Below are positions 4,241-12,779 of a stretch of 64,000 nt of DNA, one piece after another. The stretch covers positions 62,001 to 126,000 of IMG/VR virus record IMGVR_UViG_3300030385_002649; one strand, written 5' to 3'. Made by a program: the position numbers and the translations under genes. The notes beneath the pieces are model-generated. The model saw nothing but the letters and a program-made list of their open reading frames with translations, did no database searches and had not been told where the DNA came from. Position 1 is the stretch's first letter; every line of letters starts with the position of its first letter.

Positions 4241-4548
4241 CTGACAACTTTGGGTTTGGGTTTAAATTCAACGATTGGTTTCGTTATTACTCGCCCTCTA
4301 AATTTAACAAATTCTCTAGAGAGCATGATTTAGATATGTACGGAGAAGATATTAACGCACTCCAAGCACTTTTCAAAAAGTACGGATACGATTCTCTCCG
4401 TGGACAACTCGATGAGTTCATGGATCAAGAACCCAAGTCCTTGAAGTTTCCAACGCCGATGAAGAATGTCGAAGTTCCTTACACCGATCCGGACTGTGCT
4501 GGGTGTGGAGTTGGACCCGACGAGGACTGCATCGAATCACGACATTAA
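4237..4548 (+). CDS. hypothetical protein with C-terminal CAGC...C motif
   Basis: Track ORF 4207..4548; ATG4237 overlaps the stop of 4061..4240 (ATGA) and is the likelier start. Confidence 0.65.
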   Translation: MTDNFGFGFKFNDWFRYYSPSKFNKFSREHDLDMYGEDINALQALFKKYGYDSLRGQLDEFMDQEPKSLKFPTPMKNVEVPYTDPDCAGCGVGPDEDCIESRH

Positions 4549-5639
4549 GCTTCCGGAGTCGCAACGTAAGTTATGACAACCTCCTGAACGTTGCCAGTTT
4601 CACGAGCTTTAGCTAGGGCGGCAGTAACAGCTGTCCTGGCCGCGTCAACCCCACTGTAAGAGTTGACCTGAACAACATCATTGTCTTTCACAACGAAAGT
4701 CAACTCTTCAGTGACGTTAACAGTATCAACAATTTCAAGACCGTAAGTCGCTCTTGGATACTTGATTGGATTATGAATCGTAACTGAGTTAGAGCCCGCA
4801 AATAAAAGGCCGACAGCGTTACGATTCATGTCCATCAACAGACTGCCAGAGTCTCCACCCTGGCTCATAACGCCAGTTATGATTTGGTCTTGGAATTTTA
4901 GAGTTCCAATGCCATAATCAACCCAAACTGTGGCGTTAAGACCAATGATATTGCCTGTTGTGTGACCTGTGGTTCGCCCTGTTTTTTGAACTGCCATGCT
5001 CATTGTTGGGTTGTCATTAAAGGCAACGATTGAACCGATGTCTTTAATGGCTTCTTCGACAAGGTTTTCGTTATCAATAACGGCAATGGCGGAGTCTTCC
5101 ACGTTATAACCGTAGATTCTGTGCCAGTTGGCTGCGTCCCATGTCCTTTGTCTAGCATTAATAAGAGGGCGGAAGTACTTGAGGAGACCGATTCTATCTC
5201 TTGTGCCTCCTCCGTCGTACCTGCCTGGTTGAATAGCCATGTGTCCTCTTGAACCACGATTTTCCGCTGCGAGGACGTGATTGTTGGATAGGATGACTAG
5301 GTCGCCTTCACGGTCTCGAAACACTCCGCCGATGGTTCCCGCTGTTACCCAGAGGTGCCCGCATGAGATTCCTGGGGCAGCTGGTCGTTCTTTACTGGTG
5401 TAGGGGTGGGCTGAGATTTTACCGACTCGGCCAACTACGTCGGTTTTAACCCCTTCAATTTCATCTTCAATGATGTCTGAAGGTTTTAACTGGCTCTTTG
5501 GGACTTTTTCACTAACGAGGACAATTAGGGCGTCCTCGTCGGTGGGTTTTCCGTCTACCCATTTCTTGCCTGTAGCAACTGCTACGACGTTCTTTTTCTT
5601 GTGTAGACGATCACCATGGGCTTCAACTAGGTTTTTCAT
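4545..5639 (-). CDS. trypsin-like (S1) serine protease, Nal1-like architecture
   Basis: AGTIG, LSNNHVL (His), EDSAIA (Asp), KTGRTTG, GGDSGS (Ser); N-terminal VVAVATGKK...LVSEKVP...EIEGVKTDV prodomain-like segment. Confidence 0.88.
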   Translation of the reverse strand: MKNLVEAHGDRLHKKKNVVAVATGKKWVDGKPTDEDALIVLVSEKVPKSQLKPSDIIEDEIEGVKTDVVGRVGKISAHPYTSKERPAAPGISCGHLWVTAGTIGGVFRDREGDLVILSNNHVLAAENRGSRGHMAIQPGRYDGGGTRDRIGLLKYFRPLINARQRTWDAANWHRIYGYNVEDSAIAVIDNENLVEEAIKDIGSIVAFNDNPTMSMAVQKTGRTTGHTTGNIIGLNATVWVDYGIGTLKFQDQIITGVMSQGGDSGSLLMDMNRNAVGLLFAGSNSVTIHNPIKYPRATYGLEIVDTVNVTEELTFVVKDNDVVQVNSYSGVDAARTAVTAALAKARETGNVQEVVITYVATPEA

Positions 5640-6061: not shown

Positions 6062-6172
6062 TCATTATATTTATCTTTAGTATTCTAATCGCATGGAGGG
6101 AATGAGGGAATTGATTTTATGTATTTAACTCTTGCGATTAAAGCAACTTCATAAAAAGCAAAGAGAACTAAA

Positions 6173-7462
6173 ATGAGCACAGTAACAGAACAACACATGC
6201 TAATCTTCACAGATATCGACAATAACAATAACAAGTTTTGGGAGGGCGTCTTAAAGGATGACAACACTCTTACTTGTCGATGGGGACGGGTTGGAGAACG
6301 AGGACAAAGCCGCGATTTCTCCGGAGGAGCCAAGAAATTGGCAGCCAAGTTGCGTGAGAAAAAGCGCAAGGGCTATGAAGAGGCCATGATCCTTAAAGAG
6401 ACCGGCCCTGCAGTTAGTGTTGGGAAGAGCCGACTTAAAAAGGTCGCGGCCAAGCAGATTGATCACGGATCGTGCGCGGAAACATCAACTCTCATTGAAT
6501 TCCTGGTTAAAGTCAACCGACACCAAATTTCTGCTGCCTCTGGTGGTAAGATTTTCATCGATGACGACGACGGGCTGATCAGAACTCCTCTTGGGGTTGT
6601 CAACCAGGAAGCTATCGATGCTGCTCGGATCTTCCTCACGGACATTGGCGATTGCGTCCAAGTTAAGTCCTACACTACTAAAAAATGGAAGGAAGCGGTC
6701 AACAAGTTCACTAGGCTTATCCCCCAGGACGTCGGTCGTGGTAGGGGGTGGGATAAGAAACTCTTCCCTAACATCTCGGCTGTTCGAAAGCAGAATGATT
6801 TGTTGGATTCGCTGCAGACCACTCTCACTCACGTCTTGGATAACCCTGCCAAGACTAAAGCTGATGCGAAGGAGGAAGATGTCTTCAAGGTTAAGCTTGT
6901 CCCGTTGACTGATGATAAAGTTCTTTCTCACATTAGGAGCTTCTATTATAAGAGTGTGAAGAAGATGCACTCTAGTTATGGGATGAAAATCAGCCGAGCA
7001 TGGGTCGTGGACATCGAGACGATGCGTAAAAAGTACGAAACTGATGGGGCGGGGCTGAGCAACGTCTGGGAGCTTTGGCACGGTACAAAGGCTTCGAACG
7101 TCCTCTCCATCTTAAAGGGTGGCCTGGTTATTCCCCCATCAACAGCAGGTCACGTATGTGGTCGGATGTTCGGCGATGGTCTTTACTTCTCTGACCAGAG
7201 CACGAAGTCTTTGAACTATGCTACTGGTTATTGGGACGGGTCGTCGGAGGAACGTTGTTTCATGTTCATGTCGGACGTGGCGATGGGCGAGACTTACGTT
7301 CCTAAGTCGACCTATTGGGGTCAATCTAACACTAAGAGTTGTCCTAAGGGCTATGATAGCACGTTCGCTAAGGCTAACGTTTCTGGCGTTCAGAATAACG
7401 AAATGATCGTTTATAGGACTTCTCAGGCTAACTTGAGATTTCTCGTTGAATTCGTCCGTTAA
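6173..7462 (+). CDS. poly(ADP-ribose) polymerase-like protein (WGR + regulatory + catalytic)
   Basis: WGR domain (CRWGRVGERGQ...EKKRKGY), helical regulatory region, catalytic LWHGT, MFGDGLYFSDQSTKSLNY, NNEMIVY. Confidence 0.93.
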   Translation: MSTVTEQHMLIFTDIDNNNNKFWEGVLKDDNTLTCRWGRVGERGQSRDFSGGAKKLAAKLREKKRKGYEEAMILKETGPAVSVGKSRLKKVAAKQIDHGSCAETSTLIEFLVKVNRHQISAASGGKIFIDDDDGLIRTPLGVVNQEAIDAARIFLTDIGDCVQVKSYTTKKWKEAVNKFTRLIPQDVGRGRGWDKKLFPNISAVRKQNDLLDSLQTTLTHVLDNPAKTKADAKEEDVFKVKLVPLTDDKVLSHIRSFYYKSVKKMHSSYGMKISRAWVVDIETMRKKYETDGAGLSNVWELWHGTKASNVLSILKGGLVIPPSTAGHVCGRMFGDGLYFSDQSTKSLNYATGYWDGSSEERCFMFMSDVAMGETYVPKSTYWGQSNTKSCPKGYDSTFAKANVSGVQNNEMIVYRTSQANLRFLVEFVR

Positions 7463-7601
7463 GTGGAGATGCAAATGGTGTGGATACCCCTGGGAACACA
7501 TTAACTCAGACGTTACTTGGAAATGCTCGCCAGAAAATTGTTACAATTACAGAATTTGGTTCTCTTATAATGTGCAAATAGACAGGCCATTCCCGGTATG
7601 A
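7446..7601 (+). CDS. Cys/His microprotein, array 1 member A (51 aa, TTG start), not in ORF track
   Basis: MNSSVKWRCKWCGYPWEHINSDVTWKCSPENCYNYRIWFSYNVQIDRPFPV*; overlaps the PARP stop by 17 nt; ATGA overlap with the next ORF. Confidence 0.6.
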   Translation: MNSSVKWRCKWCGYPWEHINSDVTWKCSPENCYNYRIWFSYNVQIDRPFPV

Positions 7602-7753
7602 GCGCGTTTAATGATGCTTTTCAGGATTGTAAGTGTGGCACGGTTTGGCATCATTTCCACGTCGGGTTTCACTGCTGGCATAGTTACCAAATTCGAGCCT
7701 GGAGAATAGAACTTTATGAAGAAGACGCAGGAATTGTGATCGATGGCTTGTAA
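7598..7753 (+). CDS. Cys/His microprotein, array 1 member B (51 aa), not in ORF track
   Basis: MSAFNDAFQDCKCGTVWHHFHVGFHCWHSYQIRAWRIELYEEDAGIVIDGL*. Confidence 0.75.
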   Translation: MSAFNDAFQDCKCGTVWHHFHVGFHCWHSYQIRAWRIELYEEDAGIVIDGL

Positions 7754-7754
7754 T

Positions 7755-7889
7755 GTGATTGATAATTTTCCTTGTCGGTGCGGACCGGATCCTGATCATT
7801 TCCAAGAAAATTGCTGGTACAGCTACCAAATCAAGTTCTGGGAAGCACCGATCAAGGTTTACCCTTTAATTAGTGGGGAAAAGATCTGA
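7755..7889 (+). CDS. Cys/His microprotein, array 1 member C (44 aa, GTG start), not in ORF track
   Basis: MIDNFPCRCGPDPDHFQENCWYSYQIKFWEAPIKVYPLISGEKI*; TGATG overlap with 7889. Confidence 0.75.
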   Translation: MIDNFPCRCGPDPDHFQENCWYSYQIKFWEAPIKVYPLISGEKI

Positions 7890-8188
7890 TGGAGATAGGT
7901 ATTGACCTTTTCCCGTGTTCTAATCTTATTTCGGGGGACAAAGACATGCTGAAAGATGAAGTTCTCACGTTGTGCAGATGTAAGGAGGAAAGCATCACCC
8001 ATTGGGAAGAAAATTGCTGGTATAGTTATCAACTTCCCAGGTGGTCTAAGGGTGTTGTCCGGCACGATCATTTGAGGTGTGACTTCCCGGCGTGGGCTCG
8101 GCTGTTGGTTGAGGCTCGTGGTAGAGTTGAGGATCCTGCGATTGCGATGGACAAATTGTTGATGGAATTTGAAACTCATGGTTTGTAG
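7889..8188 (+). CDS. Cys/His microprotein, array 1 member D (99 aa)
   Basis: LCRCKEESITHWEENCWYSYQLPRW core plus a C-terminal helical extension. Confidence 0.75.
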   Translation: MEIGIDLFPCSNLISGDKDMLKDEVLTLCRCKEESITHWEENCWYSYQLPRWSKGVVRHDHLRCDFPAWARLLVEARGRVEDPAIAMDKLLMEFETHGL

Positions 8189-8324
8189 ATGCCATTATGA
8201 AGTGTCGATGGTCCATTGGGGGAAAACTTGTTGGATTTCTTATCGAATCCCTAGATATAGGAAGACCGTTAGATTGGATTATCCAACAATTCATCGGCTT
8301 AACAAAGTGAAGGACTTATTATGA
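8178..8324 (+). CDS. Cys/His microprotein, array 1 member E (48 aa), not in ORF track
   Basis: MVCRCHYEVSMVHWGKTCWISYRIPRYRKTVRLDYPTIHRLNKVKDLL*; 11-nt overlap with D. Confidence 0.72.
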   Translation: MVCRCHYEVSMVHWGKTCWISYRIPRYRKTVRLDYPTIHRLNKVKDLL

Positions 8325-8372: not shown

Positions 8373-8975
8373 ATGGCGGTTACTGCTAACAAGGAACAAT
8401 TTGTGCTCATCTACACGAGCAACAAGAATCACGACAACCTGGTTTACCAAGTCGACAACGTGCATCGTGGGGTGTACCACTTGCGCTGTGTCGAGACTAG
8501 TCGGGTTATCAAGGCTCATAAGAGCCGTATTAGGAAAGTTCTATCCGAGGAGGAAATGATGAACGGAACTGGCGTTATTGAAGATACCGAGGTTGTCAAC
8601 GAGTCGACGACCACGGACAACATCGAAGTGAAGGCTCTAGAGGAAACTGACGAGACAATCGAGGCGATCAAGCCAAAGGCTAAGGTCAAGAAGACTAAAG
8701 CCCAAGCTATCCCCTTCGACTTCGATCAGTTCAAGACCGATGGTTACGAGATTTGGGTTAAGTCCGATCTTGAGTTCGACATCGAGAATGTTAAGGTTGA
8801 CGCGATCTGCCTCATCTACCCGGATGAGGCCAGTTACGAGACTTTCAACATCTACAACGGTTCTCTCGGAAAGAAGGGGTCTCGCGGTCAGAACTATAAG
8901 TTCACCGAGAAGAACACCATCGAGAGGAAGCGTAAGCAGCTGGGCAAGAAGGGCTACACCCAACGTAGCAACTAA
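8373..8975 (+). CDS. hypothetical protein, possible degenerate C-terminal WGR-like domain
   Basis: Strong AGGAGG RBS. C-terminus GKKGSRGQNYKF...KRKQLGKKGY parallels the PARP WGR GRVGERGQSRDF...KLREKKRKGY. Confidence 0.7.
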   Translation: MAVTANKEQFVLIYTSNKNHDNLVYQVDNVHRGVYHLRCVETSRVIKAHKSRIRKVLSEEEMMNGTGVIEDTEVVNESTTTDNIEVKALEETDETIEAIKPKAKVKKTKAQAIPFDFDQFKTDGYEIWVKSDLEFDIENVKVDAICLIYPDEASYETFNIYNGSLGKKGSRGQNYKFTEKNTIERKRKQLGKKGYTQRSN

Positions 8976-10590: not shown

Positions 10591-10885
10591 CTGCGAGCTA
10601 GAGGTAGAGGTTCTAGACTGTGGGTGGGTTTCAGACTTGCTAACGCATCTATACGTTCCAGCGGCAGAAATGGACATTGAGATTAGCCTGAATGAAGGAC
10701 TTATCAATGTCCAAGCATGGGGCGACGACAGTGTTTATAATTGTAGAGTATTTGACCCTCACGACATAGAGTTCATAGACGATCTAAGAGAATACTTGAT
10801 TCCTATGTGCGAAAACCATGAAGTACACATGAGGTACCCAGATGAAAAAAGCGGAAATAATCCAGAAGCTAGTAAAACACCTTAA
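10547..10885 (+). CDS. hypothetical protein (112 aa)
   Basis: Fills the gap before ligA; weak resemblance to the 147..542 frame (IIKDLLKDSCELEV vs IIRGWLQETCPDLTV). Confidence 0.65.
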   Translation: MKLIPSIIKDLLKDSCELEVEVLDCGWVSDLLTHLYVPAAEMDIEISLNEGLINVQAWGDDSVYNCRVFDPHDIEFIDDLREYLIPMCENHEVHMRYPDEKSGNNPEASKTP

Positions 10886-12779
10886 CCGTTGCGACCTAGC
10901 CTATTACAACCAAACCCCACTCATCAGCGACCAAGACTACGACAAACTCCGAGACAAGCTAACCAGCCTAGACCCAAGCAACCCCTTCCTCGCAAAAGTT
11001 GGGGCTCCCGTCGTCACCACGGACGGACGAAGCAAGCACACACATAAATCGCTCATCGGGTCCCTTGCCAAGTGCAAGACCAAAGAAGAGTTCATGAAAT
11101 GGGCCGAGGGAAAGGGCCCCCTGTGCGTCAGCTACAAGTATGATGGCAGTACAGTAGTCGCCACCTACGAAAGCGGTACGCTGAAAACTCTAGCGACCCG
11201 TGGCGATGGCACCATCGGAGAAGATATCACGGACAATGCCGACCTGATAGGCTCAAAATCCAACACTTACCATTTCATCCCGAAGCAACTTACCTCCGAT
11301 TTTACCGGAGAAATCCGAGGCGAAGCTATCCTGCGTTTAGGTCGGTTTGAAGAGTTCTTCAAGCCCGCTGGTTACAAAAACGCCCGCAACGCCGCCAACG
11401 GAAAAGTCCGCGATATGAAGCGCGACGACCTGATCAAATGGTTGGAAGTGGTGTGGTTCGATATCATCCCCGAGGACCGTGATGTCAAGACTGAGGGAGA
11501 GAAATGGGCTCTCATCCAGGAACTTGTCAACGATGATCGCCCCACCACTAAGAGTCTCGCTATGGCTCAGATCCAGACTGACGCCGAGAAGGCATGGGAG
11601 ATCTTCGAGGAGGTCGGCAAGCTTAGGTCCGGCTTGGACTTTGAGATTGACGGTATAGTCGTCAAGGTAAACGATATTGATGACCAAGAGTCCTTCGGTG
11701 TCACTAGTAACCGGCCCAATGGGGCTATCGCTATCAAGTTCCCCTCTTTGGGAGCAGAAACCTTTTTGGAGAGTATCGAATGGAATCGTGGATTGACAGG
11801 GGTTTACGCCCCGACCGGGATCCTCAAGTCGGTAGATATCGGCGGAGTGACCATAGGAAGAGTCTCCCTGTGCGGCATGGACGAGATCCGCAGGTTGAAG
11901 ATCGCCCCAGGAGACAAGGTCTACATCACCCGGCGAAATGACGTCATCCCCAAGGTTGAATATGTCATCAATCGGACCCCACAGCCGGGGACCATCCGAA
12001 CTCCAGTTAAAGCACCTAAGACGTGTAATGAGTGTGACGCCGACCTGATCCAGAACGGATCCTACCTGATCTGCCGAAACCCGGACTGCCAGGGAGAGAT
12101 TTTCGGTAGTCTCATGACCTGGATTCAGCGTTTGAAGATTAAAGGGCTAGGGTCTTCAGTGCTCCGGTCCCTCATCGACGAGGGCGTCACGGACATCTGC
12201 AAGCTCTACGAAGCTCAAGAGGAAGTCTATGAAAAAGCAACAAGATCCTCAAAGCTTGCAGCTAAGCTCTACGCATCCGTGCAATCAACAACGGAAGTTA
12301 GACTTGGTACTTTCTTATCAGGGCTCTGTATACCGTCTCTCGGGGCTACAAACGGTACGCGGTTGGAAAAGCGATTTAATACGCTTGAAGCAGTTGTCGC
12401 AGCATCCGAAGAAGACCTGGAAGGAGTACCGGGCATCAAAACAAATGCTAAGAAAATCAGAGCAGGACTTGACGCTAAATCCGATCTAATCGAAGGATTA
12501 GCTAAGATCCTAACGATCAAGACTCTAGACACTAGTGGGCCTCTAGCTGGACACACTGTCTGTGTCACCGGGGATTTAACCGTCCCAAGGTCTAAGTTCC
12601 AAGATTGGATTAGGTCTCTAGGAGGGGAAGTTAAGTCGGGCGTCTCTAAGGACCTATCGTATCTTATAACTAACGCTCCTGCAAGCGGCACTTCTAAGAA
12701 CAAGAAAGCGGACAAGTATGGTGTCAGAAAGTGTACTGAAACGGATTTCTATAGTCTTATCGGGTCCTCGCCAGCCTAA
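10842..12779 (+). CDS. ligA: NAD-dependent DNA ligase
   Basis: KYDG adenylation motif, TRGDG, EIRGE, DGIVVK, AIKF, C4 Zn finger, HhH repeats, C-terminal BRCT (VCVTG...GGEVKSGVSKDLSYLI). Confidence 0.96.
   Translation: MKKAEIIQKLVKHLNRCDLAYYNQTPLISDQDYDKLRDKLTSLDPSNPFLAKVGAPVVTTDGRSKHTHKSLIGSLAKCKTKEEFMKWAEGKGPLCVSYKYDGSTVVATYESGTLKTLATRGDGTIGEDITDNADLIGSKSNTYHFIPKQLTSDFTGEIRGEAILRLGRFEEFFKPAGYKNARNAANGKVRDMKRDDLIKWLEVVWFDIIPEDRDVKTEGEKWALIQELVNDDRPTTKSLAMAQIQTDAEKAWEIFEEVGKLRSGLDFEIDGIVVKVNDIDDQESFGVTSNRPNGAIAIKFPSLGAETFLESIEWNRGLTGVYAPTGILKSVDIGGVTIGRVSLCGMDEIRRLKIAPGDKVYITRRNDVIPKVEYVINRTPQPGTIRTPVKAPKTCNECDADLIQNGSYLICRNPDCQGEIFGSLMTWIQRLKIKGLGSSVLRSLIDEGVTDICKLYEAQEEVYEKATRSSKLAAKLYASVQSTTEVRLGTFLSGLCIPSLGATNGTRLEKRFNTLEAVVAASEEDLEGVPGIKTNAKKIRAGLDAKSDLIEGLAKILTIKTLDTSGPLAGHTVCVTGDLTVPRSKFQDWIRSLGGEVKSGVSKDLSYLITNAPASGTSKNKKADKYGVRKCTETDFYSLIGSSPA

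What the first reader, a model, noticed from the sequence alone, without database searches (positions are those of the whole stretch)
6173..7462. Phage-encoded PARP1-like enzyme with a full polymerising active site
Seen: WGR + helical regulatory + catalytic domains. Established: human PARP1 needs H862, Y896 and E988 (with K903 for elongation). Equivalents are all present: WHGT, GLYF, STKS, NNEM. The best-known phage ADP-ribosyltransferases (T4 Alt/ModA/ModB) are R-S-E mono-ARTs, so a DNA-break-activated H-Y-E PARP in a phage is unusual. Possible roles (inference): DNA-end protection or repair, NAD+ competition with SIR2/TIR defences, or modification of host proteins.
Basis: partly seen in the sequence, partly recalled or inferred. 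Interest (0 to 1): 0.78.

Follow-up and report, generated by a model that had tools for sequence, protein, structure and literature searches.

The report
Jumbo-phage PARP enzyme, known kind
An uncultured marine jumbo phage carries an intact, compact PARP-type ADP-ribosyltransferase with every residue expected for DNA-break sensing and catalysis, but such phage PARPs have been catalogued since 2014, so this is a new member of a known, still untested, family.

Summary
Window 6173-7462 (+) encodes a 429-aa, 48-kDa protein with WGR, helical regulatory (HD) and PARP catalytic domains. H303, Y338, K345, Y349 and E410 match human PARP1 H862, Y896, K903, Y907 and E988. These residues, and the WGR positions that in PARP2 bind the 5'-phosphate and relay activation, are conserved in about 110 viral and bacterial homologues. 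An AlphaFold model (pLDDT 87) superposes on DNA-bound PARP1 and PARP2. The genome is a complete 371-kb phage with terminal repeats.

The claim that this is unusual is overstated. H-Y-E PARPs in phages were reported in 2014, 2021 and 2022. They are annotated in cultured jumbo phages (XacN1, Xoo-sp13, FBKp34, Cellulophaga phi4:1) and have their own PHROG family. The family has over 2,400 metagenomic members, shared and exchanged between large phages and bacteria.

"PARP1-like" is imprecise: there are no zinc fingers or BRCT domain. This is the minimal PARP2/3-type or bacterial-type architecture. H-Y-E alone does not prove polymer synthesis, although a PARP1/2-length D-loop and active bacterial homologues favour it.

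The genome's one macrodomain occurs at the jumbo-phage background rate, and there is no PARG. The biological role remains untested.

The parts
6173..7462 (+). PARP gene: 429 aa, 48.0 kDa, pI 9.3; stop codon included
   Evidence: ORF list; Pfam; PHROG 23333 at 8e-64 over the full length; M1 nearly invariant among homologues, which supports this start; mass and pI
6191..6385 (+). WGR domain (aa 7-71), with N18, N20, K21, W37, R39, K63 and Y68
   Evidence: Pfam WGR 2.5e-14. Aligns to PARP3 and PARP2 WGR domains through the NNNNKF and RWGRVGE.GQS motifs. The roles of PARP2 N127, N129, K130, W151, R153 and K183 come from PMC8190142. Conservation is given.
6428..6841 (+). Helical regulatory (autoinhibitory) domain, six helices, aa 86-223
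   Evidence: Pfam PARP_reg at aa 137-215, 3.9e-8. The AF2 model has helices 86-95, 102-122, 145-163, 170-182, 193-197 and 201-223. The PLG, LIP.D.G and LLDSL motifs align to the PARP1 HD.
6932..7453 (+). ADP-ribosyltransferase (PARP catalytic) domain, aa 254-427
   Evidence: Pfam PARP 5e-27; Foldseek to PARP1 and PARP2 catalytic structures, E 1e-20 to 1e-26
7079..7084 (+). H303-G304 (PARP1 H862-G863), NAD+ binding
7112..7180 (+). D-loop region LKGGLVIPPSTAGHVCGRMFGDG (aa 314-336), of PARP1/2 length
   Evidence: Aligned to PARP1 [22 protein letters not shown] with no deletion. Lower pLDDT here fits a flexible loop. PARP3 lacks a D-loop (PMC8150716).
7184..7219 (+). Y338 (Y896), K345 (K903), S346 (S904) and Y349 (Y907): the nicotinamide and acceptor pocket
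7394..7402 (+). N408-N409-E410. E410 is the catalytic Glu (PARP1 E988). N408 replaces PARP1 Y986 and is near-invariant in the phage/bacterial family.
6062..6172 (.). AT-rich divergent intergenic region upstream of the PARP gene, with a purine-rich stretch (AAAGAGAA) just before the ATG
   Evidence: Sequence read. The promoter scan gave no more sites than shuffled controls, so no promoter is claimed.

Best explanation
The gene encodes a compact DNA-strand-break-sensing ADP-ribosyltransferase. It belongs to the minimal WGR-HD-ART PARP family shared by large phages and bacteria.

Inferred mechanism, by homology with PARP2/3 and the bacterial PARPs:
1. The WGR domain docks on a nick or DNA end carrying a 5'-phosphate, using K21, W37 and K63.
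2. N18, N20 and R39 pass the signal to the helical domain.
3. The helical domain unfolds and releases autoinhibition of the ART domain.
4. The ART domain (H303, Y338, E410, with G304, S346 and Y349 forming the nicotinamide pocket) uses NAD+ to ADP-ribosylate itself and nearby proteins or DNA termini. It probably extends short or long poly(ADP-ribose) chains.

During infection the likeliest substrate context is the phage's own replication, recombination and repair intermediates. The gene sits in a DNA and nucleotide metabolism block, not among packaging genes.

Shown here: domain architecture, residue conservation, fold and phage origin. Inferred: DNA dependence, chain length, targets and biological role.
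For: All three domains score above Pfam cut-offs. The residue-level alignment to PARP1 and PARP2 places H-Y-E, K903, Y907 and a full-length D-loop. The WGR aligns to PARP2/3. Every PARP2 residue that PMC8190142 assigns to 5'-phosphate binding or signal relay that could be placed by sequence (all but Y201) has a conserved equivalent: N18, N20, K21, G38, R39 and K63 are at least 95% conserved in 111 homologues, and W37 is aromatic in most. The AF2 model has pLDDT 86.9 and pTM 0.77 with six HD helices. The whole chain superposes on PARP1 WGR-HD-CAT bound to a DNA break (4dqy_C and 4opx_C, TMq 0.71) and on PARP2-DNA complexes (7aeo, 6x0l), with E about 1e-25. [quoted passage not shown] That study's phylogeny includes Corynebacteriales and Burkholderiales PARPs, the same groups as homologues found here. 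The local context is helicase, NAD-dependent ligase, endonuclease and MazG. In relatives the context is type II topoisomerase, Rnl1 RNA ligase, HNH and GIY-YIG nucleases, and a predicted DNA-binding partner.
Against: No phage PARP has been assayed. PARP3 and PARP4 carry H-Y-E yet are mono-transferases (PMC8150716), so polymer synthesis is not guaranteed. The PARP1 Y986 position is an invariant Asn in this family, with unknown effect. The PARP2 Y201 equivalent could not be placed from sequence alone. There is no PARG in this genome, and only 1 of 25 near-complete PARP-bearing phage records has one. That is unlike the bacterial PARP-PARG systems and leaves PAR turnover unexplained. The gene neighbourhood is not conserved: PARP and LigA lie within 10 kb in only 3 of 128 loci. 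The replication/repair role therefore rests on loose context only. There is no expression data; only DNA runs from a marine metagenome hold the gene.
Confidence: 0.62

Rival explanations
1. Host-takeover enzyme. Like T4 Alt, ModA and ModB, the phage PARP modifies host proteins such as RNA polymerase, nucleoid proteins or the translation apparatus to redirect the cell, but with ADP-ribose chains instead of single units.
For: This is the suggestion made for jumbo-phage PARPs in PMC7824862. [quoted passage not shown]
Against: The break-sensing WGR residues and a complete autoinhibitory HD are strictly conserved. A constitutive host modifier would not need them. The gene is not fused to MuF or portal domains and is not next to packaging genes, which are the contexts used to argue for injected ARTs. 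No target-recognition domain is present.
Confidence: 0.18
2. PARP3-like mono-ADP-ribosyltransferase. It caps nucleic-acid termini (5'- or 3'-phosphates at nicks and ends) or proteins with single ADP-ribose units rather than building polymers. The genome's MacroD-type macrodomain would be the eraser.
For: The WGR aligns best to PARP3 (2eoc, 2.8e-6). PARP3 has H-Y-E but only mono-ADP-ribosylates, including DNA break termini (PMC8150716). The genome has a MacroD/TTHA0132-type macrodomain but no PARG. The PARP1 Y986 position is Asn.
Against: A D-loop of PARP1/2 length is present, whereas PARP3 lacks one. Bacterial homologues of the same architecture make PAR. Macrodomains are no commoner in PARP-bearing phages (15 of 25) than in jumbo phages generally (56%), p = 0.42.
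Confidence: 0.25
3. NAD+ sink or anti-defence device. The enzyme consumes NAD+ to starve NAD-dependent host defences (SIR2, TIR), or to exclude superinfecting phages.
For: PARP activation can consume NAD+ rapidly (general knowledge). NAD+ is a known battleground between phages and hosts (PMC9503650). NadV salvage is somewhat commoner in PARP-bearing phages (14 of 25, against a 33% baseline, p about 0.015, uncontrolled).
Against: This phage encodes an NAD-dependent DNA ligase 3.4 kb downstream and has no NadV, so draining NAD+ would hurt its own replication. Host SIR2 and TIR defences themselves work by depleting NAD+, so a further sink would help the host. There are no PADLOC matches for the PARP or its neighbours.
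Confidence: 0.06
4. The contig is bacterial (chromosome, plasmid or mis-binned DNA), so this is simply a bacterial PARP.
For: Close homologues occur in at least 60 bacterial species and on megaplasmids, and the tree intermixes viral and bacterial rows.
Against: The genome is an IMG/VR virus record of 370,804 bp with direct terminal repeats and CheckV completeness of 100%. The window holds a virion structural protein (phrog_1645, 8e-69), a tail protein, a phage-type helicase and a protease. There are split terminase-like hits in one frame. The virion protein's relatives are marine phages.
Confidence: 0.02

Closest known systems
Annotated phage PARPs: Xanthomonas phages Xoo-sp13 and XacN1 (BBA65562.1), Stenotrophomonas phages CM1 and RAS14, Klebsiella phages 05F01, FBKp34 (gp111) and KP13-16; PHROG 23333
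   Same: They have the same length (about 415-430 aa) and the same WGR-HD-ART architecture. tblastn covers 98-99% of the query. FBKp34 gp111 is annotated with all three domains. They also come from large or jumbo phages (137-385 kb).
   Different: Identity is only 32-39%. Their gene neighbourhoods differ: XacN1 has a vWA-annotated gene downstream that is unrelated to the common partner family. Their hosts are terrestrial or enteric Proteobacteria, whereas this is an uncultured marine phage.
Bacterial PARPs, Herpetosiphon aurantiacus HaPARP and Clostridioides difficile CD160 CdPARP
   Same: They have the minimal WGR-PARP_reg-PARP_cat architecture at 47-52 kDa, a conserved H-Y-E triad, and Y, W or F at the first WGR position (PMC5966428). 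The same pattern is seen here. [quoted passage not shown]
   Different: The bacterial enzymes work with a DUF2263-type PARG in the same genome. This phage has none. I could not compute direct identity to HaPARP or CdPARP because no tool supplied their sequences.
Human PARP2 and PARP3
   Same: Both have WGR-HD-ART with only a short N-terminus. The WGR motifs NNNNK[FY] and RWGRVGE.GQS are nearly identical. The residues for 5'-phosphate recognition and signal relay are conserved. The whole-chain fold matches PARP2-DNA complexes.
   Different: Overall identity is about 22%. There is no basic N-terminal tail as in PARP2. Unlike PARP3, a D-loop is present. There is no HPF1-type partner. The host context is prokaryotic, without chromatin.
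Human PARP1
   Same: The catalytic fragment is the best sequence match in the PDB (6e-19). The WGR-HD-CAT chain of DNA-bound PARP1 gives the best TM-score (0.71). H862, Y896, K903, Y907 and E988 all have equivalents.
   Different: The protein lacks Zn1, Zn2, Zn3 and BRCT, since it starts at the WGR. The PARP1 Y986 position is Asn.
T4 Alt, ModA and ModB
   Same: They are phage-encoded, NAD+-using ADP-ribosyltransferases.
   Different: They belong to a different clade (R-S-E, not H-Y-E), are mono-ARTs, and have no WGR or HD. Alt is packaged in the head (PMC9503650).

Membership tests
PARP catalytic family (Pfam PF00644; H-Y-E clade of ARTs) | ART domain scoring above the curated cut-off | tested here: met
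   95.1 bits against a cut-off of 26.7, aa 254-427; Foldseek probability 1.00 to PARP1 and PARP2 catalytic structures
PARP catalytic family (Pfam PF00644; H-Y-E clade of ARTs) | H-Y-E catalytic triad plus the nicotinamide pocket (G863, S904, Y907) | tested here: met
   H303, Y338 and E410, plus G304, S346 and Y349, aligned to PARP1. The triad, G304 and Y349 are 100% conserved in 64 viral and 45-47 bacterial homologues; S346 is Ser or Ala.
DNA-dependent PARPs (PARP1/2/3 type and bacterial PARPs: WGR + HD + ART) | WGR domain N-terminal to the catalytic region | tested here: met
   Pfam WGR 53.6 bits against a cut-off of 22; aligns to PARP3 and PARP2 WGR domains; it is the only WGR in the genome
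DNA-dependent PARPs (PARP1/2/3 type and bacterial PARPs: WGR + HD + ART) | Helical regulatory (autoinhibitory) domain between WGR and ART | tested here: met
   PARP_reg 33.9 bits against a cut-off of 26.8; six confident helices at aa 86-223
DNA-dependent PARPs (PARP1/2/3 type and bacterial PARPs: WGR + HD + ART) | WGR residues that contact the 5'-phosphate or DNA and relay activation (PARP2 N127, N129, K130, W151, R153, K183) | tested here: met
   N18, N20, K21, W37, R39 and K63 by alignment. All are at least 95% conserved except W37, which is W, Y or F in most. The Y201 equivalent could not be placed.
DNA-dependent PARPs (PARP1/2/3 type and bacterial PARPs: WGR + HD + ART) | Catalytic activity stimulated by DNA breaks | not testable with these tools
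   Needs purified protein. It is shown only for the homologues HaPARP and CdPARP (PMC5966428).
Poly-(rather than mono-)ADP-ribose polymerases | Synthesis of ADP-ribose chains | not testable with these tools
   The triad, the K903 equivalent and a PARP1/2-length D-loop are present, but PARP3 shows the triad is not sufficient (PMC8150716).
PARP1 proper | N-terminal zinc fingers Zn1-Zn3 and a BRCT domain | tested here: not met
   Pfam finds only three domains, and the WGR begins at residue 7 of 429. This is not a PARP1 orthologue.
Bacterial PARP-PARG reversible PAR system | A PARG (DUF2263/PF10021 or PF05028) in the same genome | tested here: not met
   No match in the complete 371-kb genome. PF10021 was found in 1 of 25 near-complete PARP-bearing phage records. 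The PF05028 control rang nowhere, so that negative is weak.
T4 Alt/Mod-type phage ARTs (R-S-E clade) | R-S-E active-site motif | tested here: not met
   The active site is H-Y-E.

The most novel reading that the evidence does not exclude
The phage PARP is a sensor of nicks and 5'-phosphate ends that acts on the phage's own DNA during infection. On this reading it ADP-ribosylates DNA termini or end-bound proteins. That could shield replication and recombination intermediates or genome ends from host exonucleases, or hand nicks on to the phage's NAD-dependent ligase. This would be the first PAR or MAR DNA-damage signalling pathway operating inside a virus-infected bacterium. In many relatives the PARP would work as a two-gene unit with a previously undescribed DNA-binding partner that has a winged-helix domain and an MraZ/AbrB-like domain.
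Probability: 0.2. Interest if true: 0.7.

Novelty: new member of a known kind. Interest (0 to 1): 0.35.

Why it matters
PARP-type signalling is a pillar of the eukaryotic DNA-damage response, yet nobody has shown what it does in bacteria or phages. This gene adds a well-preserved, complete example from an uncultured marine jumbo phage. The survey made here shows three things about the family: it is large (over 2,400 proteins), it is concentrated in 100-550 kb phages, and it has been exchanged repeatedly with bacteria. Its break-sensing and catalytic residues are under strict constraint. That makes phage PARPs a reasonable target for biochemistry, for example in the cultured relatives XacN1, FBKp34 or Cellulophaga phi4:1. 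The discovery that phages encode H-Y-E PARPs is not new, however.

Tried and rejected
1. ORF 8373-8975 as a second, degenerate WGR protein. BLASTP to the PARP WGR gave only E = 0.029. A family-specific WGR HMM run with all filters off found nothing at E <= 10. Rejected.

2. A conserved PARP-LigA pairing. The two lie within 10 kb in only 3 of 128 loci. Genome-wide, LigA is in 12 of 25 records against a 32% baseline, p = 0.07. Not supported.

3. The macrodomain as a dedicated eraser. It lies 262 kb from the PARP. Macrodomains occur in 15 of 25 PARP-bearing phages against a 56% baseline, p = 0.42. There is no evidence of coupling.

4. PARG and ARH erasers and NadV salvage in this genome. All absent.

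5. The conserved partner family in the own genome. Only a protein sharing the C-terminal MraZ-like domain exists, 28 kb upstream, with a different N-terminus. The XacN1 downstream gene is unrelated to the partner family.

6. Defence-system models (PADLOC) for the PARP, its neighbours and the partner. No hits.

7. Promoter scan. No more sites than in shuffled sequence.

8. Megablast of the region against cultured phages. No match.

9. RNA evidence. Only DNA runs of one marine sample hold the gene.

10. Atlas search for the small Cys-rich paralogues. Scores were below 0.9, so this is a lead only.

11. Direct comparison with HaPARP, CdPARP or eukaryotic full-length sequences in a tree was not done, because no tool supplied those sequences.
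Full report
**Observation.** Pfam finds three domains, all above their curated cut-offs: WGR (aa 7-71, 53.6 bits), PARP_reg (aa 137-215, 33.9 bits) and PARP catalytic (aa 254-427, 95.1 bits). The best matches among solved structures are human PARP1 and PARP2 (6e-19). The printed alignments pair lwHgt with PARP1 H862, glYfsD with Y896, stKslnY with K903 and Y907, and nnEmivY with E988. Codon coordinates were checked.

**The genome is a phage.** The window is bases 62001-126000 of a single 370,804-bp IMG/VR virus record. That record has direct terminal repeats and a CheckV completeness of 100%. The window itself carries a virion structural protein (phrog_1645, 8e-69), a tail protein, a helicase, a protease and an NAD-dependent DNA ligase. 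Two co-linear terminase-like hits lie in one 1,231-aa frame elsewhere in the genome. The only public runs holding the gene are DNA runs of one marine metagenome sample. The nearest cultured phages share only about 30% identity in a virion protein.

**Family size and distribution.** A search of 5.8 billion proteins returns 2,443 hits at E <= 1e-10. Nearly all are 415-445 aa with the same domains, and many lie on contigs of 100-860 kb. Pattern-seeded scans found relatives on 67 IMG/VR contigs, mostly 100-550 kb. They also found relatives in 60 bacterial species, including Armatimonadota, Acidobacteriota, mycobacteria and some megaplasmids. Among 50,697 cultured-phage records only 16 have a match. 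These are Xanthomonas phages Xoo-sp13 (39%) and XacN1 (38%), Stenotrophomonas phages CM1 and RAS14 (36%), three Klebsiella phages (32-34%), Cellulophaga phages phi4:1 and phi17:2 (30%, partial), and two uncultured huge phages. PHROG 23333 matches the whole protein at 8e-64. A maximum-likelihood tree of 112 sequences intermixes viral and bacterial rows. Well-supported branches force at least 7 label changes, and some MAG contigs are identical to viral contigs. The window's protein groups weakly (SH-aLRT 87) with two viral contigs and a Planctomycetaceae MAG contig.

**Constraint on functional residues.** In 117 homologues of 43-82% identity, H303, G304, Y338, K345, Y349 and E410 are invariant. 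In 64 viral and 45-47 bacterial homologues taken from the loci they are 100% conserved. The WGR aligns to PARP3 and PARP2 through near-identical NNNNK[FY] and RWGRVGE.GQS motifs. The PARP2-DNA crystal-structure paper assigns K130, W151, K183 and Y201 to 5'-phosphate recognition. It assigns N127, N129 and R153 to relaying the signal to the regulatory domain (PMC8190142). The phage equivalents N18, N20, K21, R39 and K63 are at least 95% conserved, and W37 is W, Y or F in most sequences. That matches what was reported for bacterial PARPs (PMC5966428). The Y201 equivalent could not be placed by sequence. One systematic difference from PARP1 is that the Y986 position is a near-invariant Asn.

**Structure.** AlphaFold2 with the 117-sequence alignment gives mean pLDDT 86.9 and pTM 0.77. 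The model has a β-rich WGR, six helices between residues 86 and 223 (a complete HD), and the ART fold. Foldseek places the whole chain on PARP1 WGR-HD-CAT bound to a DNA break (4dqy_C and 4opx_C, TMq 0.71) and on PARP2-DNA complexes (7aeo, 6x0l), at E about 1e-25. The protein has no room for zinc fingers or a BRCT domain. It is therefore not PARP1-like in the strict sense but has the minimal PARP2/3-type or bacterial-PARP architecture. At 48.0 kDa it is the size of HaPARP (47 kDa).

**Polymerase or mono-transferase.** The triad alone does not decide this. PARP3 has equivalent H-Y-E residues yet only mono-ADP-ribosylates, including DNA break termini, and it lacks the D-loop (PMC8150716). The phage segment LKGGLVIPPSTAGHVCGRMFGDG aligns with PARP1's D-loop region without deletion. 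[quoted passage not shown] I put polymer synthesis at roughly 60%. It cannot be settled in silico.

**Erasers and NAD metabolism.** The genome has one MacroD/Af1521-type macrodomain (C1:331447-332064, − strand, 205 aa). Its best PDB match is TTHA0132 at 1e-11, and it lies 262 kb from the PARP. The genome has no PARG of either type, no ARH and no NadV. It has one Nudix gene, one cytidylyltransferase-like gene and a single PARP copy. I searched 41 PARP-bearing viral records, of which 25 are at least 90% complete. Among those 25, macrodomains occur in 15, against a published 56% for jumbo phages (p = 0.42). Microbial PARG occurs in 1. NAD-dependent ligase occurs in 12, against 32% (p = 0.07). NadV occurs in 14, against 33% (p = 0.015) (baselines from PMC9503650). 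These comparisons are not controlled for genome size or relatedness. Only the absence of a macrodomain or PARG association is a firm result.

**Gene context.** The PARP heads a + strand block. It is followed by five small Cys/Trp-rich paralogues (7446-8324), a 200-aa ORF of unknown function, LigA (10842-12779), an endonuclease (phrog_8420) and a MazG-like pyrophosphatase. A helicase lies upstream. None of this neighbourhood recurs in other PARP loci, except LigA in two of them. Across 127 loci the commonest neighbour is a family of about 220 aa with no Pfam match. It lies directly downstream on the same strand in 31 loci (23 viral, 8 bacterial), spread over several clades of the tree. Its AF2 model (pLDDT 82) has a winged-helix-like N-domain, a disordered linker and a duplicated MraZ/AbrB-like C-domain (weak sequence support). 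The window's phage lacks this partner. It has only a 360-aa protein that shares the C-domain, 28 kb upstream. Type II topoisomerase subunits and a T4 Rnl1-type RNA ligase flank the PARP in one related viral clade, and the topoisomerase subunits also flank it in mycobacteria.

**Prior knowledge.** Perina et al. 2014 reported PARP genes in Aeromonas phage Aeh1 and Cellulophaga phage phi4:1, with H-Y-E fully conserved in three of the four viral PARPs they found (PMC4245714). Iyer et al. 2021 noted PARPs in a few jumbo phages, citing XacN1 BBA65562.1, and suggested they act like other phage ARTs but add chains (PMC7824862). XacN1 BBA65562.1 is one of the closest cultured relatives found here. Iyer et al. 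2022 list PART (PARP) among the most frequent viral ART families (PMC9503650). [quoted passage not shown] I found no paper reporting an assay of a phage PARP.

**Verdict.** This is a new and quite divergent member of a known kind, at most 39% identical to any cultured-phage PARP and 82% identical to one short metagenomic contig. The best-supported mechanism is a WGR-gated, DNA-break-activated ADP-ribosyltransferase acting in phage DNA metabolism. Host takeover, mono-ADP-ribosyl end-capping and NAD+ depletion are the rivals, in descending order of plausibility apart from end-capping, which can coexist with the main reading.

Noticed in passing
window 7446-8324 (+): Five tandem small ORFs (48-99 aa) lie directly downstream of the PARP. 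Some overlap by a few bases. They are paralogues sharing C-x(1,2)-C ... H ... C-W-x-S-Y-[QR]-[IL] (invariant C9, C12, W38, S40, Y41), and a 33-nt DNA repeat covers the CW.SYQ codons. They may be small zinc-binding proteins. They have no Pfam or PADLOC match, and the atlas look-alikes (zf-RVT) scored below 0.9.
   Followed up: partly
L003-L129; e.g. L008:11370-12029, L070:6287-6964, L017:1517-2140: A family of about 220 aa with no Pfam match lies immediately downstream of the PARP on the same strand in 31 of 127 loci (23 viral, 8 bacterial), across several PARP clades. Its predicted fold is a winged-helix N-domain, a disordered linker and a duplicated MraZ/AbrB-like C-domain. It appears to be an undescribed PARP partner, probably DNA-binding.
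   Followed up: partly
window 10842-12779 (+): A full-length NAD-dependent DNA ligase (LigA; phrog_3869 2e-136, TIGR00575 2.6e-112) lies 3.4 kb downstream of the PARP, in a genome without NadV. Two NAD+-consuming DNA-end enzymes sit close together, but the linkage recurs in only 2 other loci.
   Followed up: yes
genome C1:331447-332064 (-), = L001 1369-1986: The genome's single macrodomain protein is 205 aa and of MacroD/Af1521 type. Its best PDB match is Thermus TTHA0132 at 1e-11. It lies 262 kb from the PARP.
   Followed up: yes
genome C1:166794-168791 (-): Two weak but co-linear Terminase_6N matches (profile positions 6-116 and 123-211) lie about 1.3 kb apart inside one 1,231-aa open frame. 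This suggests a large-terminase gene with a big insertion, possibly an intein or an extra domain.
   Followed up: no
genome C1:38972-40054 (+), = L131 760-1842: A 360-aa protein has a C-terminus (GRIRIP ... SIRLSP) that matches the MraZ/AbrB-like domain of the PARP partner family (E = 2.9e-10). Its N-terminal 240 aa are unrelated.
   Followed up: partly
window 4545-5639 (-): A 364-aa predicted serine protease (phrog_20754 7e-57, with weak Peptidase_S64 and NAL1_N Pfam hits) is transcribed divergently, two genes upstream of the PARP.
   Followed up: no
L054 vs L098; L042 vs L112: Some MAG contigs filed as bacterial (Pyrinomonadaceae, Treponema) carry PARPs identical or nearly identical to IMG/VR viral contigs. 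Part of the 'bacterial' distribution of this family is probably phage DNA binned into MAGs, or prophages.
   Followed up: no
L014, L015, L019, L021-L023, L026, L055; L114, L115, L120, L123, L129: In one viral clade the PARP lies just downstream of type II topoisomerase A and B subunits and a T4 Rnl1-type RNA ligase. Mycobacterial PARP loci also carry the topoisomerase pair nearby.
   Followed up: no
window 8373-8975 (+): This 200-aa ORF has no match in Pfam, PHROGs, NCBIfam or PADLOC. To the eye its C-terminus looks like a WGR domain (…NGSLGKKGSRGQ…KKGY), but the test failed.
   Followed up: yes
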